Assembly (NCBI RefSeq): GCF_001194135.2
Contig: NC_068984.1
Span: 111,525,893 to 111,589,892, forward strand
Reading direction: 5' to 3'
DNA length: 64,000 bases
Source of the DNA: Octopus bimaculoides
Taxonomy: Eukaryota
Shown here: in pieces, positions 34,058 through 56,091 of the stretch
Position numbering within the stretch: position 1 is the stretch's first letter
Layout of the letters: each line of letters begins with the position of its first letter
The notes under the pieces: model-generated
Databases searched by the model: none
What the model was told of the DNA's origin: nothing
The model's input: only the letters and a program-made list of their open reading frames with translations
Translations under genes and position numbers: made by a program

Positions 34058-34290
34058 TCATCATCATCATTGTTTAACGTCCGCTTTCCATGTTAGCATG
34101 GGTTGGACTGGTGAGCCAGATGGCTGCACCAGGCTCTAATCTGATCTCGCAGAGTTTCTACAGCTGGATGCCCTTCCTAACGCCAACCATTCCGAGAGTG
34201 TAGTGGATCCTTTTACGTGCCACCGGCACGAGGGCCAGTCACACGGTACTGGCAACTGCCACGTTCAAAAAGGTGTTTTTTATGTGCCAC
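34058..34290 (-). mobile_element. SINE family S3
   Basis: Matches 6550-6805. Confidence 0.85.
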
Positions 34291-34524
34291 CATATATATA
34301 TCAAAATAAGCAACAAGGATATCCAGAGGTAATGCAGAAAAATATGGAACACTTCACAAATTTGTGTGTCATGGATGATATGCAAATTCGTGATGCATTC
34401 CTTATTTTTCTGCATTACCTCTGGATATCCTTCTTGTTTATTTTGATTTTAATCACATTACTTTGAAATTGTATGGATAATACCATACTAAATTCTGGTA
34501 CCTCAACTTAAGTACCCTATTCAT

Positions 34525-35834: not shown

Positions 35835-37420
35835 TCTGATAAGAATACACTCTGAATCTGCCTTCACTTTCAATGACTGCTTCAATGTGGGTCCGGAAAC
35901 ATTGAAATGCCTGCACTAAACGGTCTTTGTTTATTTAAAACATCACCTGGACAATGGCAGCCTTCAGTGATGCTATGGTATTGCGAGGATGTTGATTACT
36001 CACCTTTTCAACAACTACCTAAATGTAGTAGTTCAGGAGATTTAAATCTGGTAAGCTCAGAGGTCATGAGTTTAGTGTTACATGATCATAAGGATTGTCT
36101 GACACCGATTTTTTGCATTATATGGATCTTGTGAGAATGTACTGAGTTTTGTTAAAACGTGTGTAACCTTCCACTGCATATCTCATCCATTCAGAGCTTA
36201 GCAACTGTCTCCAACATCTCAATGTAACCAGTAGCATTAATTTTAAGAATCCATGGAAAGATGTGAGGTAACATGGTATGACTTTTGCTGCTAAACTCTC
36301 CTAAAACCATCACAGTTTCTGGGAACTTAGTGTACATCACTCTGGGGACATCAGAAGCTCTACACATAATCATCTATCATTTCTTCTGTTAGACTTTTAG
36401 TCTTGGTCAAACTTTTTCTCATCTAAGAAAGAACCAAAGCATACCATGTTAGTGAGGGCTTTTAACCTTGTTAAGCCAAGCCAAGTGAGACCTAAATTCA
36501 AGGCCTCTGCCAGGGGTGTAGCCAGTCCACTTATGCGTACCTTCCTTCATTGGACACTAAACTCCGCTTGCGAAGACCTGTTGAGGCAAGTGAAATCGAA
36601 ATCGAACTAAATTCAATGACTGGCACCCATGCCAGCGTCGTCTCCTTCATTGGATACGAAACTTGGCTTGCAAAGACCTGTTGGGGCAAGCGAAAGCGAA
36701 ATCGTGATAGCACCTGTGCCCAGCGTTGCCTTCCTGGCACGTGTAAAGACATTTGAGCGAGATTGTTGACAGTGCTGCCGGACTGGCTCGTGTGCAGGTG
36801 GCACATAAAATACACCATTTTGAGCGTGGCCATTGCCAGTACCGCCTGACTGGCCTTCGTGCCAGTGGCACATAAAAGCACCCACTACACACTTGGAGTG
36901 GTTGGCGCTAGGAAGCACATCCAGCAGTAGAAACTCAGCCAAATCAGATTGGAACTTGGTGCAGCCATCTGGTTCACCAGTCCTCAGTCAAATCGTCCAA
37001 CCCATGCTAGCATGGAGGGCAGATGTTAAACGATAATGGTGATGATGATGAAGTAACCGCTTGGTAATGGTCAAATAGTTTTCCTGTGTTTTTGCAGACA
37101 TAATTTGGCCCCATCTCAGTACATACAATGTGTATGAGATATCCCTGTGTGTGTACAGTGCTAATAACTCACTCTGTCACCTGCAGTCCATTGATTTCTC
37201 AGAATCATCATCAATGATGTTTTAAACCTATTGGATGAATTGAAGTGTCCTTGTAGTGTTCAAATGTTAGAACATGCTTTGCTCTTTAATGTAGTTGAAA
37301 CATTCCAATCAGAAGCTTTCAGTTCCAACCCAAACTTTGTGTACAAAAGATCATGTGACATTTTGAAAGTATGCAAGGATCACATGTCTTTTCATTTCTC
37401 CTGTTATCATTTTATCTGCC
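35835..37420 (-). pseudogene. Tc1/mariner-superfamily (maT/DD37D-like) transposase remnant interrupted by an S3 SINE
   Basis: Minus strand: EMKRHVILAY...SFVHKVW...TRTLQFIQ*V*NIIDDD (about 37400-37200); GQIMSAKTQEN (about 37100); DEKKFDQD*KSNRRNDR (about 36420-36370); DVPRVMYTKFPETVMVLG; PDLNLLNYY-like segment; HPRNTIASLKAAI...FRTHIEAVIE. Confidence 0.85.
36520..37050 (+). mobile_element. Long S3 SINE copy with expanded internal repeats, inserted in the transposase
   Basis: Ends CCCATGCTAGCATGGAGGGCAGATGTTAAACGATAATGGTGATGATGATG. Internal GTGGCAC...ACTGGC units. Confidence 0.85.
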
Positions 37421-38694: not shown

Positions 38695-39811
38695 GTAAGT
38701 ATAAATTTTTGGTAGGTGAGGTAACTAAGATTTAGAGTAAGCTATGTCCTTTTGGAAAATCTATAAAGATTGATATTAAAATTATATCTAAATTTCAATG
38801 TTGATGTATTTGTAAGGTTTTGGGGATGTGGAGACAAAAACAGGGGAATTTTGTAAACAGTTATATGAATTTTTTAAACTATTTTGTATAACTCCAGAAA
38901 TAATAGTGTTACTGTATAATGATATTGGGATGATACTGATTTTTGTTTGATGTCTAAGTGCTGAAGATTTTAAGACAAGAAAGTAAAAAGTGCAGGCTGT
39001 TTCCTTCCAGATCTATGGTGTGTGTGGTACTGCTAATTTGGTGGGGAAAGGGTAGGATTTACCAGATGGATAGAAATAATTCATCTGCATAAATACACCT
39101 GATGAATATCTCTGTTTTGTAATGTAGACAATTCCCATTCCTCTTTGAATTAAGTAGGAAGTGTATTCTTTCTATTTTGCAACGACCAACTTTTCTTGCT
39201 TTGTTTACATATGACTTCGATTTTCAATGACGTTTTTAATACTTTACTCAACGTTCCAGTTTAGCATTTATCAAATTTTATTTACTAGTGATTGGAATTT
39301 GTTTTATTTGTGTCTAAAAGTGATTCATGGTTATAAAGTCTTTCTTTGAACACTCCCTTGTACATGCCAATGTATATCTTTTACTTGATTTCAACCAGCT
39401 TTGTTTGAGGTATCTTCATTTTCGCATTTTGAATGCTTGGTCAGATAAAATAGACAATAAATATGATCACAAATTTTCATACGATATAAAATTTTTAATA
39501 CTATAAACTTTATATGAAAAATCTTAAAATAGTATAACAAAACTGTTTGTTTATATACATGTATGAGAGTGAAGCTCATTTACAACCATTACATGATGTC
39601 AGAACATGAGTACACAGATACACGCAGTCACACACATGCACACACACACACACACACAAACATTTATATATGATGGCCTTCTTTTAGTTTCTGTCCCACT
39701 AAACTCACTCAGAAATAAGACACTTGACTAAAGTTCCCATGGTAGAATTGATTTTGAGGCAACATGGATGGGTAACAAGCATTTTAGCCACACATCCATT
39801 CCTTCACCTAC

Positions 39812-39852
<41 letters not shown>

Positions 39853-39854
<2 letters not shown>

Positions 39855-40452
39855 ACGTTGTAGTATATTGTCAACTTAATGTGACAATCCCAAGAAGGGA
39901 ATATACTACTGCCGTTTAGCCCTAGGAAGCTGGACCGCTTCCTGTCAGCCTTGACACAATTACTATGTCCTTAAGTTTGCGAGGGGGAGACAAACTCCTC
40001 CACCCAGCCTAGCCAGCATTCAGGGACATGTTTCTGAGCCTTTGTTCGTCATCAGCCTGAAGTAGCCTGCCAACTGGTTGAAGAAGTTTGTCTAGCTCTT
40101 GCAACTTATATAATCATAGTGAAGTTTATTCACTGATTAGCAAAATTAGAAATATTATATTTCTAAATCTCTCAGAGAGATTTAAGCAGTAGTGGTGCGA
40201 TAACGATGTAGTATATTGTCAACTTAATGTCAACTGAATGCTGGCTAGGCTGGGTGAAGGAGTTTGTCTCCCCCTCGCAAACTTAAGGACACAGTAATTG
40301 TGTCAAGGCCGACAGGAAGCGGTCCAGCTTCCTAAGGCTAAACGGCAGTAGTGTATTCCCTTCTTGGGATTGTCACATTAAGTTGACAATATACTACAAC
40401 GTTATCGCACCACTACTGCTTAAATCTCTCTGAGAGATTTAGAAATATAATA

Positions 40453-40460
<8 letters not shown>
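39853..40460 (-). mobile_element. Retrozyme/PLE-pLTR-like element: 348-nt terminally redundant monomer with one HHR, fused to an inverted 227-nt copy
   Basis: Direct repeat TAACG(T/A)TGTAGTATATTGTCAACTTAATGT at 39853 and 40201. Inverted repeats 39853-40023 with 40234-40404 (about 5 mismatches in 171) and 40145-40230 with 40375-40460 (about 1 mismatch in 86). (TA)n on both flanks. Confidence 0.85.
40019..40061 (-). ncRNA. Type I minimal hammerhead ribozyme motif (core boxes intact, weak stem II)
   Basis: Minus strand: TTCAGG-CTGATGA-CGAACAAAGGCTCA-GAAA-CATG-TC-CCTGAA. Perfect 6-bp stem I, palindromic ACATGT stem III, GUC site between 40025 and 40024. Confidence 0.8.
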
Positions 40461-40485
<25 letters not shown>

Positions 40486-40833
40486 NNNNNNNNNNNNNNN
40501 NNNNNNNNNNNNNNNNNNNNNNNNNNNNNNNNNNNNNNNNNNNNNNNNNNNNNNNNNNNNNNNNNNNNNTTTTCACCTTGTTTCAAATTGTTTCAAAAAC
40601 AATTTGAAAAACCTACACGACTAGGTGAAAAGCGCTTCATTTAATATGTGACATTAATAAAAATCTGTAAATGTACAAACATCCAGGTTTCTGAGTACCT
40701 TAATTAAAAATTTTTTTCTATATAATTTCTGTACATCACCTCCAAACCTTCAAATATATATATATATATCTATATATATATATCTATATATATATAGATA
40801 TTGGCTAAACTGGCAATATGACCATCCCCAAGT

Positions 40834-49821: not shown

Positions 49822-50590
49822 TTATTATTATTATTCAGTATTTTTATTTTTATGACATGCTTTCACTTCACTACTGAGCGCAGCTCTGTGTGCCTTGAGT
49901 ATGTGCTGTGGTTTGCTGTGATGCTCTTATGTTTACTGTATTGAAAGTGTTTTGCGTGTTTTGTGTGCAGTGCCCAGTAGTGCAATTTTCTGTATGTTAT
50001 ATATATTTGTAAGTCCTGGTGTTTTTGTTATGTATTTGTCTGAATATTTTTTATTATACCTAAGGCACCTACTATGATAGGAATTGTTTCTGTTTTTAGA
50101 TTCCACATTCGAATTACCTCTATTTCCAGGTCTTTGTATTTTGAAAGTTTTTCCATTTCTTTTAGGGAAACGTTGTCATCTGCTGGTATTGATACATCAA
50201 TTAGAAAGCATTTTTTTTATTCATGTTCTCTGACAACTATATTTGGCCTATTGGCCTTAATTTCTCTATCTGTGTGTATTGGTATATCCCAGAGTATGGT
50301 TGCTTTCTTGTTTTCTGTGACCTTTTCTGGCATGTGCTTATACCATCTTTTTTCTGTTATTACATAGTGTTGGCATAACTTCCAGTGTATGTAGGTCCCA
50401 GCTCTGTCGTGTCTGTGAATATATTCCTTCTTAGCCAGGACTGGGCAACCAGAGATAATATGATTTATTGCTTCTTGTCCATTGCCACATTGGTCTTGTG
50501 CAGCAATTAAAAATCCTTCAGTCTCTGCTTTGAGTCCTGAGCTTCTCAACCATTGCTGGGATTTTTCTCTGTCTATTTCTTTTGCAGGTT
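49822..50590 (-). pseudogene. R4/Dong-clade non-LTR retrotransposon 3' fragment (CCHC remnant, RLE endonuclease, 3' UTR, (TAA)n tail)
   Basis: LKAETEGFLIAAQDQ...EAINHIISGCPVLAKKEYIHRHDR...ILWDIPIHTDREIKANRPNIVV; [30 protein letters not shown]; IQKIALLGTAH. Internal deletion in the CCHC finger. Confidence 0.92.
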
Positions 50591-50625
50591 TATTATTATT
50601 ATTAATATTACTATTATTATTATTA

Positions 50626-50662
<37 letters not shown>

Positions 50663-50871
50663 CATTTATGGTTTCTTTTCATTATATCTTTATTTCAGCT
50701 GCCTTAGTACCAGGCATTCTCCAGAGGCCAAGAGTAGCAAGGGCACACATTAATTCCATATTATATTAGATGGAGAGTGCTTTCTGTAGTATATGGGCTG
50801 TTCCCATCAAGGTTATCATTTTGTAGTTCACGGAGAGTGGAGTTACTCGGGAGTTGCTTAATATTTTTCTC

Positions 50872-54260: not shown

Positions 54261-54527
54261 AGACTGTAAACAAAATCTTTGCTATTTATGCAAATGGTGT
54301 CATTTGCTCAAAGTCCACCATGAAAGTACGTCCAGGCTGTTCATGTTCAGTACAATGGAGTAGTATTACTATCTGCTTGGAAACCAGTGGAAAGGGTAAC
54401 CAGCCATAGAAAAAAAAAAATCTATATCAATGCAAACCTGGAAATGCAGTTATTAAAACTATTATAAGTTTACATTATTTACATTATTTACATTTCACGG
54501 ATATTTGTCCTCATGTTGTTTGTTGTT

Positions 54528-54573
54528 AACATAACGTTTCAGCTGATATACCCTCCAGCCTTCGTCAGGTGTC
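54528..54573 (-). ncRNA. Hammerhead motif, left arm (weakened stems)
   Basis: Minus strand: GACAC-CTGACGA-A-GGCTG(GAGGGTATAT)CAGCT-GAAA-CG-TT-ATGTT. C.A mismatch at the base of stem I. Confidence 0.65.
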
Positions 54574-54733
54574 GTTGGGAAATTTTAAACCTGAGTTCTC
54601 ATTCCTTGGCTACTAACCCCAAGATTCCGAGTTCGATTCACGGCAGCGACCTGATTAATAATAGTAATAATAATAATAATATAATAATAGTAACATCGTT
54701 AGGAATGAGAACCCAGGTTCAAAATTTCCCCAA

Positions 54734-54779
54734 GGCACCTGACGAAGGCTGGAGGGTATATCAGCCGAAACGTTGTGTT
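54734..54779 (+). ncRNA. Type I minimal hammerhead ribozyme, all core nucleotides intact
   Basis: GGCAC-CTGACGA-A-GGCTG(GAGGGTATAT)CAGCC-GAAA-CG-TT-GTGTT. Stem I has 3 Watson-Crick and 2 G.U pairs, stem II 5 bp, stem III is the palindrome ACGT, site GUU after 54774. Confidence 0.8.
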
Positions 54780-55193
54780 AACAACAATAAAGATGAGGAT
54801 AAATATCCGTCAAATGTAAATAATGTAAATAATTCCTCATCTCTTAAATATAGAACTGTATTATAATAAGGATACATATGGCTGAATATGTGTGCAAGTG
54901 TGTATGTGTCTACATATGTGTGTGTGTGTGTGTGACTGTCCATAGAGGTTTATTTCTAGCCAAGTATTACTCTTGTAGTTGTCTCACTCAGAAGAGGACA
55001 TCAGTTGTTCCTCTTCCAGGTACAAAACTAAACTGCATCTCATCAGGGCTAATCCTGTTCCTATTCAATTTTGCAATAATTCTTTGAGTAAATTTTCATG
55101 ACCTGGTTTGACCTTATAACCCCTCTGATGTTTCCTCCCTTTGGTGCCTTTGTAACAGTTTACAATGTTGCTGCTCCACCAGCCATACACACA

Positions 55194-55254: not shown

Positions 55255-56091
55255 AGAATATTTGTTTTTCATCTATAAACTTTTTTAATCTAAAATATAC
55301 TCTCCTTCATTTTCTACAATTCTCTTCCATCTATCTGGTTGACTTGCAAGATCTCTCTTCCAAAACTCACTTTTCCATGATGAAAAGTACTTCTCCAGTA
55401 CCGTTCTGACCTCATGATTTTTCCATTCAAATGATTTTGAAGACTGCAGAATAAATGGTAATCAGATGAAGCAATGTCCAGTGAATATGGTGGATGGGGC
55501 ATTGTTTCCTATTCAAACTGCTCCGGCCTATGGAATGTCATTTTCAGTGAATGTGGCCAAGCATTATCCTCATGGAAGAACACTTTTCGTTTTTAACCAA
55601 AGATTGTCATTTTTCTTCTAGCACAGTTGCTGAATGGCTGAATGACCAAATCCAAGCCTCTCTGCTATTTCCTCAACAGTTATGATGGGATTTTGCTCCA
55701 CTAGGGTTTTCAGGATGTCCTCATCGAGCTCTGTAGATTTTCTAGGATGAGGCTCATCTAGGCTGCAGTTTCTGGCTTGGAATTTCTGGAACCACTGTTG
55801 ACACTGGCTTACACTTATTGTCTGATCCCCATATACTGCCTTAATATTCCTCTCTCTTTTCATTGCATTGTTGCCTTTATTGAACTCATAAAGCAAAATA
55901 TGCCAAATATGCTCCTTTGTCACTTCTATTACAGCTTTGGAAAAATAACTGTTAAAATCAAACTGCACTCTTCAAACTTTGCACTAAGAATACCTGTTTA
56001 TATAGCAAGTTGATGAAGGTAGTTTATCCCCTTCTGACTTTTAGTTCATGCAAGTGAAAAAAACCCACATTATTTATGGGATGATCCAATA
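55255..56091 (-). pseudogene. Internally deleted mariner (SETMAR/Mos1-like) element with one TIR
   Basis: KEHIWHILLYEFNKG...KAVYGDQTISVSQCQQWFQKF...LVEQNPIITVEEIAERLG (HTH) and HPPYSLDIASSDYHLFCSLQNHL (YSPDL motif). TIR TATTGGATCATCCCATAAATAATG ends at 56091; most of the catalytic core is missing. Confidence 0.9.

What the first reader, a model, noticed from the sequence alone, without database searches (positions are those of the whole stretch)
39853..40460. Retrozyme-like 348-nt circularly permuted monomer whose inverted copy starts at the hammerhead cleavage site
Seen: on the minus strand, 40230 to 39853 begins and ends with the same 30 nt (period 348 nt) and contains one HHR. That HHR has intact CUGAUGA and GAAA boxes, a 6-bp stem I, palindromic stem III and a GUC site, giving a 3' product that starts CCUGAAUGCUGG. 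The adjoining inverted copy (40234-40460) starts CTGAATGCTGG, 1 nt after that site, and follows monomer order for 227 nt. Known: Penelope-like elements carry minimal type I HHRs with palindromic stem III that act as dimers, and metazoan non-LTR retrozymes are HHR-containing monomers of roughly 170-400 nt that give circular RNAs. Inference: this locus records reverse transcription of a self-cleaved circular or multimeric RNA, with a strand inversion at the cleaved 5' end. It may be an undescribed cephalopod retrozyme family.
Basis: partly seen in the sequence, partly recalled or inferred. Interest (0 to 1): 0.85.

Follow-up and report, generated by a model that had tools for sequence, protein, structure and literature searches.

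The report
Hammerhead-bearing repeat inserted tandem-plus-inverted
This is a retrotransposed copy of a small non-coding repeat that carries a decayed self-cleaving hammerhead motif, inserted into a TA microsatellite in the tandem-plus-inverted layout typical of Penelope-like elements. It is a new example of a known kind, with one suggestive but unreplicated detail: the inverted copy starts at the ribozyme cut site.

Summary
Minus strand 40230-39853 holds 1.09 units of a 348-nt repeat. Plus strand 40234-40460 holds an inverted 227-nt copy (97.4% identical) that starts 1 nt 3' of the predicted hammerhead scissile bond.

The motif has intact CUGAUGA and GAAA boxes, a 6-bp helix I, a palindromic ACAUGU helix III and a GUC site. 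Helix II cannot pair properly in this copy. Rfam gives no hammerhead hit even at E<=10.

- Both outer ends abut (TA)n.
- An assembly gap follows on the right.
- The inverted copy has 56 nt more at its 3' end than the direct copy.

A partial tandem, a head-to-head inverted 5'-truncated copy, an AT-rich target and a one-sided extension are the published signature of integration by Penelope-like elements (PLEs). A PLE protein has been shown to cut and extend both DNA strands in vitro. The unit is 348 nt, 42% GC, non-coding and strongly self-paired (z = -5.6), so it fits metazoan non-LTR retrozymes, which are already known in molluscs.

The match between breakpoint and cleavage site (p about 0.01-0.03) fits run-off reverse transcription on self-cleaved RNA, but it is a single case. 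No other copy could be found, and the source taxon could not be verified.

Verdict: new member of a known kind, moderate interest.

The parts
39821..39852 (.). Left flank: a (TA)16 microsatellite plus one G. It abuts the 3' end of the direct copy and is the presumed target tract.
39853..40230 (-). Direct copy, 378 nt = 1.09 units of the 348-nt repeat (m1-m348 plus m1-m30). Its 3' end (m30) faces the left flank.
   Evidence: D3: 30-nt terminal repeat, 29/30, spacing 348.
40019..40061 (-). Type I hammerhead-like motif: UUCAGG / CUGAUGA / CGAACAAAGGCUCA / GAAA / CAUG / UC | CCUGAA. The predicted cut lies between 40025 and 40024. Helix II is defective.
   Evidence: No Rfam hit.
39969..40109 (-). 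Long interrupted helix that extends helix I (m122-175 pairs with m207-262), with the hammerhead core at its tip.
   Evidence: Predicted folds. Direct-repeat family D4 reflects this complementarity.
40231..40233 (.). 3-nt filler (CAA on the + strand) at the head-to-head junction. With its neighbours it makes a second TGTCAAC 11 nt after the first (40217-40223 and 40228-40234).
40234..40460 (+). Inverted 5'-truncated copy, 227 nt = m208-m348 plus m1-m86. Its 5' end is 1 nt 3' of the predicted cleavage site, and its 3' end (m86) faces the right flank.
   Evidence: I1, I2; 97.4% identity; 5 transitions in 171 nt against the direct copy.
40405..40460 (+). 56-nt 3' extension (m31-m86) present on the inverted copy but absent from the 3' end of the direct copy. 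It holds an AC-rich stretch and two perfect hairpins, and is a candidate PLE-type 'tail' between two reverse-transcription start sites.
   Evidence: Comparison with PMC11167929. This is an inference.
40461..40485 (.). Right flank: a (TA)n microsatellite that abuts the 3' end of the inverted copy.
40486..40569 (.). 84-N assembly gap. Gaps in this window mostly sit at microsatellites.

Best explanation
The locus is one retrotransposition event of a 348-nt non-coding RNA repeat that bears a hammerhead. The repeat is a metazoan 'non-LTR retrozyme', that is, a non-autonomous derivative of a Penelope-like element (PLE), and it inserted into a (TA)n microsatellite.

Shown:
- The layout is flank-(TA)n | 3'...5' inverted copy | 3-nt filler | 5'...3' direct copy of 1.09 units | (TA)n-flank. 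Both 3' ends point outward.
- The two copies are not derivable from one another.
- The unit is non-coding, AT-rich and strongly self-paired.
- It carries the hammerhead core boxes, helix I and a palindromic helix III.

Inferred mechanism:
- A PLE-type RT/GIY-YIG enzyme supplied in trans cut both strands of the AT-rich target.
- It primed a cDNA from each 3'-OH at two internal sites of the RNA, m30 and m86.
- One cDNA copied more than one unit of a multimeric or circular template, through an uncleaved hammerhead site.
- The other cDNA ran off at, or 1 nt short of, a 5' end made by hammerhead self-cleavage.
- The two cDNA ends were then joined with a 3-nt filler.

The hammerhead recorded in this copy is probably inactive because helix II has decayed.
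For: Repeat anatomy. The inverted copy extends to m86 while the direct copy stops at m30, so neither is a DNA duplicate of the other. The arms differ by 5 transitions in 171 nt.

Motif. There are 2 descriptor hits against 0.115 expected. Helix I is 6 bp. Helix III is 1-2 bp with a palindromic loop, which matches the 'canonical metazoan type I' description in PMC4209133. Cofolding two copies forms the intermolecular ACAUGU helix.

RNA properties: the longest stop-free stretch is 48 codons. GC is 41.7%. The fold z-score is -5.4 for the linear form and -5.6 for the circular form, with 68% of bases paired. These fit the retrozyme features in PMC7229834.

Insertion signature:
- Partial tandems, an adjacent inverted 5'-truncated copy, a one-sided tail and (TA)n target bias are described for PLEs in PMC8557442.
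- A PLE protein cleaves and extends both strands at AT-rich DNA and starts reverse transcription at two internal sites (PMC11167929).
- Retrozymes have been proposed as non-autonomous PLE derivatives (10.64898/2026.07.22.740005).
- (TA)n tracts cover only about 3% of the window, so a landing inside one is unlikely by chance.

Breakpoint: it lies within 1 nt of the scissile bond, out of 348 possible positions.
Against: - Helix II does not pair in this copy, and Rfam hammerhead models give no hit even at E<=10.
- Only 1.09 + 0.65 units are present, with no other copy in the window. None was found in any searchable collection, so neither family status nor a consensus hammerhead could be shown.
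- The window has no PLE RT/GIY-YIG ORF.
- The difference between the two 3' ends is 56 nt, against the published 30-40 bp tail.
- In the one PLE studied in vitro, HHR cleavage was not needed for insertion, and no RNA-seq reads ended at the HHR site.
- The breakpoint coincidence is a single case, noticed post hoc.
- A second HHR-like inverted pair in this window reads through its cleavage site in both arms.
Confidence: 0.62

Rival explanations
1. This is the same PLE-type insertion, but the inner end of the inverted copy is an ordinary random 5' truncation or an RT stall at the three-way junction. Its position next to the GUC site is a coincidence, and hammerhead cleavage played no part.
For: [quoted passage not shown] HHR cleavage was dispensable in vitro, and no RNA ends were seen at the HHR site in Anolis. 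Helix II of the only recorded HHR here is defective. The other HHR-like inverted pair at 54470-54837 reads through its site in both arms. This is a single case found post hoc.
Against: The chance of landing within +/-1 nt of one given bond in a 348-nt unit is about 0.009, or about 0.02-0.035 after allowing for the 2-4 ends that could have been compared. The HHR that would have cut the template lies on the lost 5' fragment, so its state is not recorded.
Confidence: 0.3
2. This is a fragment of a 348-bp satellite DNA array that was rearranged at the DNA level, by fork-stalling and template switching or by a recombinational inversion. No retrotransposition event is recorded here.
For: HHR-bearing units occur as tandem satellite-like arrays such as newt satellite DNA. 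Microsatellite-rich DNA is prone to replication errors. The junction has a short duplicated TGTCAAC.
Against: Fewer than two units lie between two (TA)n tracts, which is not an array. The head-to-head arrangement with both 3' ends outward at an AT-rich target, and with different 3' end points, matches two-strand target-primed synthesis. It does not match a local inversion, which would keep a single set of end points.
Confidence: 0.06
3. This is an assembly artefact: two different genomic copies of the repeat were mis-joined, or gap filling near the N run created the inversion.
For: The assembly is a gapped short-read scaffold with 15 N runs in 64 kb, one of them 26 bp from the element. PLE tandem/inverted structures are known to trouble short-read assemblies.
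Against: The junction lies about 250 bp from the gap. There is no shared k-mer at the junction that a graph assembler could mis-join. The arms are 2.6% divergent, so this is not a fold-back of one molecule. Gaps here sit at microsatellites generally.
Confidence: 0.04
4. The hammerhead-like motif is a chance resemblance. The element is an unrelated structured SINE or satellite with no ribozyme ancestry.
For: There is no Rfam hit at E<=10, no pairable helix II, and no family alignment to show conservation or covariation.
Against: The expected number of such motifs is 0.05-0.115 per window, even without requiring the palindromic helix III or the placement at the tip of a 40-bp helix in a tandem unit of retrozyme size. 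Helix II is one or two transitions from pairing, one of them a CpG-type change (sequence).
Confidence: 0.08

Closest known systems
Metazoan non-LTR retrozymes (Cervera & de la Pena 2020, PMC7229834), for example the 350-390-bp Mytilus galloprovincialis repeats
   Same: The unit size (348 nt) falls in the range. It also shares GC below 50%, no coding capacity, a type I hammerhead with a weak palindromic helix III, a highly self-paired predicted RNA, and evidence for a template longer than one unit.
   Different: Only 1.09 direct plus 0.65 inverted units are present, rather than a tandem array. Helix II is defective and there is no Rfam match. Expression as circular RNA and family copy number are unknown. 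No sequence similarity to described families could be tested.
Penelope-like element insertion architecture (Evgen'ev & Arkhipova 2005, as cited in PMC8557442; Craig et al. 2021, PMC8557442; Frangieh et al. 2024, PMC11167929)
   Same: Partial tandem (as in a pLTR), an inverted 5'-truncated copy directly at the 5' end, an extra 3' extension on one side only, insertion in a (TA)n / AT-rich target, and a hammerhead motif.
   Different: There is no RT/GIY-YIG ORF, so the unit is non-autonomous. The one-sided extension is 56 nt rather than 30-40 bp. The inverted copy ends at the hammerhead cleavage site, a relation I did not find described in the papers read.
PLE minimal and canonical metazoan type I hammerheads that act as dimers (Cervera & de la Pena 2014, PMC4209133)
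   Same: CUGAUGA and GAAA boxes, a 6-bp helix I, A15.1-U16.1 and C15.2-G16.2 with a palindromic ACAUGU, a GUC site, and a predicted intermolecular helix III in a dimer.
   Different: The conserved G10.1-C11.1 closure is not in register, because an extra A lies before G12. Helix II has an A.C mismatch. Activity is untested and probably lost in this copy.
L1 twin priming (Ostertag & Kazazian 2001; from my own knowledge)
   Same: Two target-primed cDNAs made on opposite strands give an inverted 5' segment joined head-to-head to a direct 3' segment.
   Different: Here the template is a repeat or circle, so the two segments overlap instead of being adjacent. There is no poly(A). The enzyme class is presumably a PLE rather than a LINE.

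Membership tests
Hammerhead ribozyme, type I (metazoan canonical / PLE-type) | Conserved core: C3U4G5A6N7G8A9 ... G12A13A14 ... U16.1 H17 | tested here: met
   CUGAUGA at 40055-40049, GAAA at 40034-40031, U and C17 at 40026-40025.
Hammerhead ribozyme, type I (metazoan canonical / PLE-type) | Helix I (about 6 bp) formed by the sequences 5' of the core and 3' of the cleavage site | tested here: met
   UUCAGG pairs with CCUGAA (6 bp) and continues as a roughly 40-bp interrupted helix.
Hammerhead ribozyme, type I (metazoan canonical / PLE-type) | Short helix III (1-2 bp) with a small palindromic loop that allows dimeric action | tested here: met
   A-CAUG-U is the palindrome ACAUGU. Cofolding two copies forms the 6-bp intermolecular helix. 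The feature is as defined in PMC4209133.
Hammerhead ribozyme, type I (metazoan canonical / PLE-type) | Helix II of at least 4 bp closed by G10.1-C11.1 | tested here: not met
   In CGAACAAAGGCUCA only G-C, A-U and C-G can pair, around an A.C mismatch and with unpaired end nucleotides. The minimum-energy fold pairs the core CUGA with UCAG instead.
Hammerhead ribozyme, type I (metazoan canonical / PLE-type) | Match to the Rfam hammerhead covariance models | tested here: not met
   No hit at gathering score and none at E<=10 on 39800-40500.
Hammerhead ribozyme, type I (metazoan canonical / PLE-type) | Self-cleavage at the predicted site | not testable with these tools
   This needs in vitro transcription of monomer and dimer constructs.
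Metazoan non-LTR retrozyme | Unit of 150-450 bp that contains a type I HHR | tested here: met
   The period is 348 nt with one HHR-like motif per unit. The range is from PMC7229834.
Metazoan non-LTR retrozyme | Head-to-tail tandem copies | tested here: inconclusive
   Only 1.09 units are present. The m348/m1 junction is, however, recorded twice in non-identical copies. 'Solo' monomers are accepted in 10.64898/2026.07.22.740005.
Metazoan non-LTR retrozyme | GC below 50% and non-coding | tested here: met
   GC is 41.7%. The longest stop-free stretch across the circular unit is 48 codons. A six-frame pseudo-protein search found nothing. LTR, PBS and PPT motifs were not searched for specifically.
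Metazoan non-LTR retrozyme | RNA predicted to be highly self-paired | tested here: met
   z = -5.4 for the linear form. z = -5.6 with 68% of bases paired for the circular form.
Metazoan non-LTR retrozyme | Many genomic copies; expression as linear and circular RNA | not testable with these tools
   There is no second copy in the window and no match in the viral, metagenome or prokaryotic collections.
PLE-mediated insertion | Partial tandem plus an inverted 5'-truncated copy adjacent to the 5' end | tested here: met
   The definition is in PMC8557442.
PLE-mediated insertion | AT-rich / (TA)n target | tested here: met
   Both outer ends abut (TA)n. (TA)n covers about 3% of the window. The target bias is described in PMC8557442 and PMC11167929.
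PLE-mediated insertion | A 30-40-bp 'tail' on one side, reflecting two internal RT start sites | tested here: inconclusive
   The two 3' ends differ by 56 nt (m30 against m86). The segment starts with an AC-rich stretch followed by hairpins. Its length falls outside the published range.
PLE-mediated insertion | A PLE RT / GIY-YIG enzyme present in the genome | not testable with these tools
   None is present in this 64-kb window.

The most novel reading that the evidence does not exclude
The inverted copy is a full-length run-off cDNA of a hammerhead-cleaved RNA. [quoted passage not shown] A genome-wide pile-up of inverted or truncated copy ends at the GUC site would be the first in vivo evidence for what the hammerhead does in retrozyme/PLE mobilisation. 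Reviews call that role a mystery, and in vitro work found cleavage dispensable.
Probability: 0.3. Interest if true: 0.65.

Novelty: new member of a known kind. Interest (0 to 1): 0.38.

Why it matters
Retrozymes and hammerheads associated with Penelope-like elements (PLEs) are widespread, but the in vivo role of the ribozyme in mobilisation is unresolved. The one biochemical study found cleavage unnecessary and saw no RNA ends at the site.

A family whose insertions end at the scissile bond would turn that question into a simple genome-wide count. It would also tie retrozyme integration to the two-strand priming seen for a PLE enzyme in vitro.

As a single decayed copy, the locus mainly adds one more example of known biology. 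If the source is indeed a cephalopod, it also adds a taxon for which no retrozyme description turned up in the literature searched.

Tried and rejected
Searches for relatives all came back empty:
- Exact-pattern scans with the HHR region, two other monomer segments and the second HHR motif, against viral contigs, JGI metagenomes and GTDB genomes.
- A concatenated six-frame pseudo-protein of the circular monomer against the 5.8-billion-protein set, in the hope of spurious ORF calls on Logan or ENA contigs.
- Exact look-ups of two window ORFs that overlap the element.

Taxon identification failed. A LINE RT fragment gave named hits only at 54% identity (a coral and a sea cucumber). Two 77-83% identical hits were on anonymous ENA metagenome contigs.

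Pfam on ten window ORFs gave only a Mos1 HTH and no PLE enzyme. ARAGORN found no tRNA or tRNA-like gene.

Explanations rejected:
- Snap-back (hairpin) cDNA synthesis. It would give a symmetric palindrome joining m208 to m208, whereas the junction joins m208 to m1.
- A MITE or foldback with terminal inverted repeats. The arms are circularly permuted relative to each other.
- A fold-back sequencing artefact. The arms differ at 6 of 227 positions.
- A-to-I editing as the source of the differences between arms. The five transitions go in both directions on both strands, so this is uninformative.

Full report
**1. Observation**

- On the minus strand, 40230 to 39853 is 378 nt. Its first and last 30 nt match 29/30 at a spacing of 348 nt (family D3).
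- I number the unit m1-m348, with m1 = window 40230.
- Plus strand 40234-40460 is an inverted copy of 227 nt. It equals m208-m348 followed by m1-m86, at 97.4% identity and E = 1e-108.
- Three nucleotides (40231-40233) separate the two copies.

The hammerhead-like motif on the minus strand reads UUCAGG / CUGAUGA (40055-40049) / CGAACAAAGGCUCA / GAAA (40034-40031) / CAUG / U C17 (40025) | CCUGAA. The 3' cleavage product would begin at m207 (40024). The inverted copy begins at m208.

A descriptor of my own required helix I, both core boxes, a short helix III and UH, but no helix II. It finds two hits in the window against 0.115 expected per 64 kb in shuffles.

**2.

- Helix II is not pairable in this copy. 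Only G-C, A-U and C-G can form, around an A.C mismatch and with unpaired flanking nucleotides. The minimum-energy fold pairs the core CUGA with UCAG.
- Rfam gives no hammerhead match at gathering thresholds, nor at E<=10 on the 700-nt region.
- Both outer ends of the structure abut (TA)n: 39821-39851 and 40461-40485. An 84-N gap follows the right tract.
- Pure (TA)n tracts of at least 6 repeats cover about 3% of the window. Most of the 15 gaps sit at microsatellites, so the gap is ordinary for this assembly.
- The two copies end at different 3' positions, m30 for the direct copy and m86 for the inverted one. The inverted copy therefore cannot be a DNA duplicate of the present direct copy.
- The arms differ by five transitions in 171 nt. 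There is also one transversion in the 5' terminal repeat of the direct copy.

**3. Properties of the unit**

- GC is 41.7%.
- The longest stop-free stretch across the circularised unit, in any frame, is 48 codons.
- The RNA is predicted to be unusually stable. The z-score is -5.4 for the linear form and -5.6 for the circular form, with 68% of bases paired.
- Helix I continues as an interrupted helix of roughly 40 bp (m122-175 with m207-262), so the hammerhead core sits at the tip of a rod.
- Cofolding two copies forms the intermolecular ACAUGU/ACAUGU helix III expected of hammerheads that act as dimers.

**4. Surroundings and relatives**

- There is no second copy of the unit in the window.
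- No PLE reverse transcriptase or GIY-YIG ORF is visible. Pfam on ten candidate ORFs gives only a Mos1 transposase HTH at 55621-55971.
- Every attempt to find relatives elsewhere failed: pattern scans of viral, metagenome and prokaryotic genome collections, a six-frame pseudo-protein search and exact ORF look-ups.
- The source taxon could not be established. A LINE RT fragment has named relatives only at 54% identity, in a coral and a sea cucumber.

**5. Mechanism**

The layout is head-to-head: (TA)n, then the inverted copy with its 3' end outward, then a 3-nt filler, then the direct copy with its 3' end outward, then (TA)n.

This is the published architecture of Penelope-like element (PLE) insertions:
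- Partial tandems that form pseudo-LTRs.
- A 30-40-bp 'tail' at one end only.
- A (TA)n target bias.
- Trouble in short-read assemblies (PMC8557442).

Biochemistry gives a cause. A purified PLE protein cleaves and extends both strands of AT-rich DNA. It starts reverse transcription at two adjacent internal sites of the RNA, in an AC-rich stem-loop, and the tail is the segment between those sites (PMC11167929).

Applied here, one cDNA was primed at m30 and copied 378 nt. That is more than one unit and passes through an uncleaved hammerhead site, so its template was multimeric or circular. The other cDNA was primed at m86 and stopped at m208, one nucleotide short of the 5' end that self-cleavage would create. 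The 56-nt difference between the two 3' ends (m31-m86) begins with an AC-rich stretch followed by two perfect hairpins. This resembles the tail but is longer than the published range.

A single dimeric RNA, cleaved at its ends but not at its internal site, could have templated both cDNAs. These steps are inference; only the anatomy is shown.

**6. How much weight the breakpoint carries**

- Landing within +/-1 nt of one given bond in a 348-nt unit has a probability of about 0.009. Allowing for the two to four ends that could have been compared gives about 0.02-0.035.
- It is a single observation, noticed post hoc.
- In the Anolis PLE, hammerhead cleavage was not required for insertion in vitro, and no RNA-seq reads ended at the site.
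- A second hammerhead-like motif in this window lies on the + strand: CUGACGA at 54739, a good 5-bp helix II with a bulged A, G10.1-C11.1 and an ACGU helix III. It sits in both arms of a 370-bp inverted repeat (about 54470-54606 and 54701-54837, 92% identical). Both arms read through their cleavage site.
- That second element shows that hammerhead-bearing inverted pairs recur in this genome. Such pairs were also noted in Schistosoma, where dual HHRs lie 100-700 bp apart on opposite strands. In that element, cleavage did not set the ends.

**7. Rivals**

- Coincidental truncation in an otherwise PLE-type insertion is the main rival (confidence about 0.3).
- DNA-level rearrangement of a satellite fragment is unlikely, given the two different 3' end points and the microsatellite target.
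- An assembly artefact is unlikely. The junction lies about 250 bp from the gap, no shared k-mer sits there, and the arms are 2.6% divergent.
- Snap-back cDNA synthesis is excluded, because the junction joins m208 to m1 and not m208 to m208.
- A chance motif is unlikely on the descriptor statistics and on its placement in the unit. It cannot be excluded without a family alignment.

**8. Comparison with what is known**

The unit meets most of the tested criteria for metazoan non-LTR retrozymes: unit size, GC below 50%, no coding capacity and a highly self-paired RNA (PMC7229834). Tandem copy number was inconclusive.
- These elements are already described in a mollusc, the mussel, with 350-390-bp units.
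- A 2026 preprint argues that they are non-autonomous derivatives of PLE pseudo-LTRs.
- Literature searches found no description of cephalopod retrozymes. They found only a count of 235 Rfam Hammerhead_1 hits in the giant squid genome.

As a hammerhead, this copy meets the core, helix I and helix III criteria. It fails the helix II and Rfam criteria. I therefore call it a hammerhead-derived motif that is probably inactive, not a demonstrated ribozyme.

**9. Verdict**

The locus is a new member of a known kind: a PLE-type insertion of a retrozyme-like repeat. The one detail that could matter is the inverted copy ending at the scissile bond. It is worth a genome-wide count but is unproven. Interest 0.38.

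Noticed in passing
window 54470-54837 (motif on the + strand, 54734-54779; mirror copy on the - strand in the left arm): A second, different hammerhead-like motif: GGCAC CUGACGA A-GGCUG-GAGGGUAUAU-CAGCC GAAA CG UU|GUGUU. It has a bulged A, G10.1-C11.1, a 5-bp helix II and a palindromic ACGU helix III. It lies in both arms of a roughly 370-bp inverted repeat (arms 92% identical) with an (AAT)n tract in the centre. Rfam scores the element only as a long hairpin (MIR7533-like, below gathering) and finds no hammerhead. Both arms read through the predicted cleavage site.
   Followed up: partly
window 40145-40184 and 40421-40460 (m47-m86 of the unit): Two adjacent near-perfect hairpins, AAAUCUCUC-UGA-GAGAGAUUU and UAGAAAUAU-A-AUAUUUCUA, follow an AC-rich stretch (UCGCACCACUACUGC). 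This block is the part present at the 3' end of the inverted copy but not of the direct copy. It may mark where reverse transcription starts.
   Followed up: partly
window 40217-40234: The head-to-head junction carries TGTCAAC twice, 11 nt apart. The 3-nt filler CAA could therefore be a re-copy after slippage of the cDNA end on the hairpin loop, rather than untemplated addition.
   Followed up: no
whole window: Microsatellite density is extreme. There are 74 pure (TA)n tracts of at least 6 repeats (3% of bases), plus many (CA)n and trinucleotide runs. Most of the 15 N gaps are bordered by microsatellites. The window is a gapped short-read scaffold.
   Followed up: partly
window 55621-55971 (-): A mariner/Mos1-type transposase N-terminal HTH fragment (Pfam HTH_48, E = 1.4e-16).
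   Followed up: partly
window 50220-50678 (-): A C-terminal fragment of a non-LTR retrotransposon RT ORF. The best named relatives are 51-54% identical proteins from a coral (uncharacterized) and a sea cucumber (UniRef: 'reverse transcriptase zinc-b…'). Two anonymous ENA metagenome contigs carry 77-83% identical fragments.
   Followed up: partly
window 6608-6844 (+), 34140-34463 (+), 36616-36987 (-): The same translated stretch (…SDLAEFLQLDALPNANHSESVV…) recurs at three places. This indicates a dispersed repeat family of a few hundred bp, possibly a SINE.
   Followed up: no
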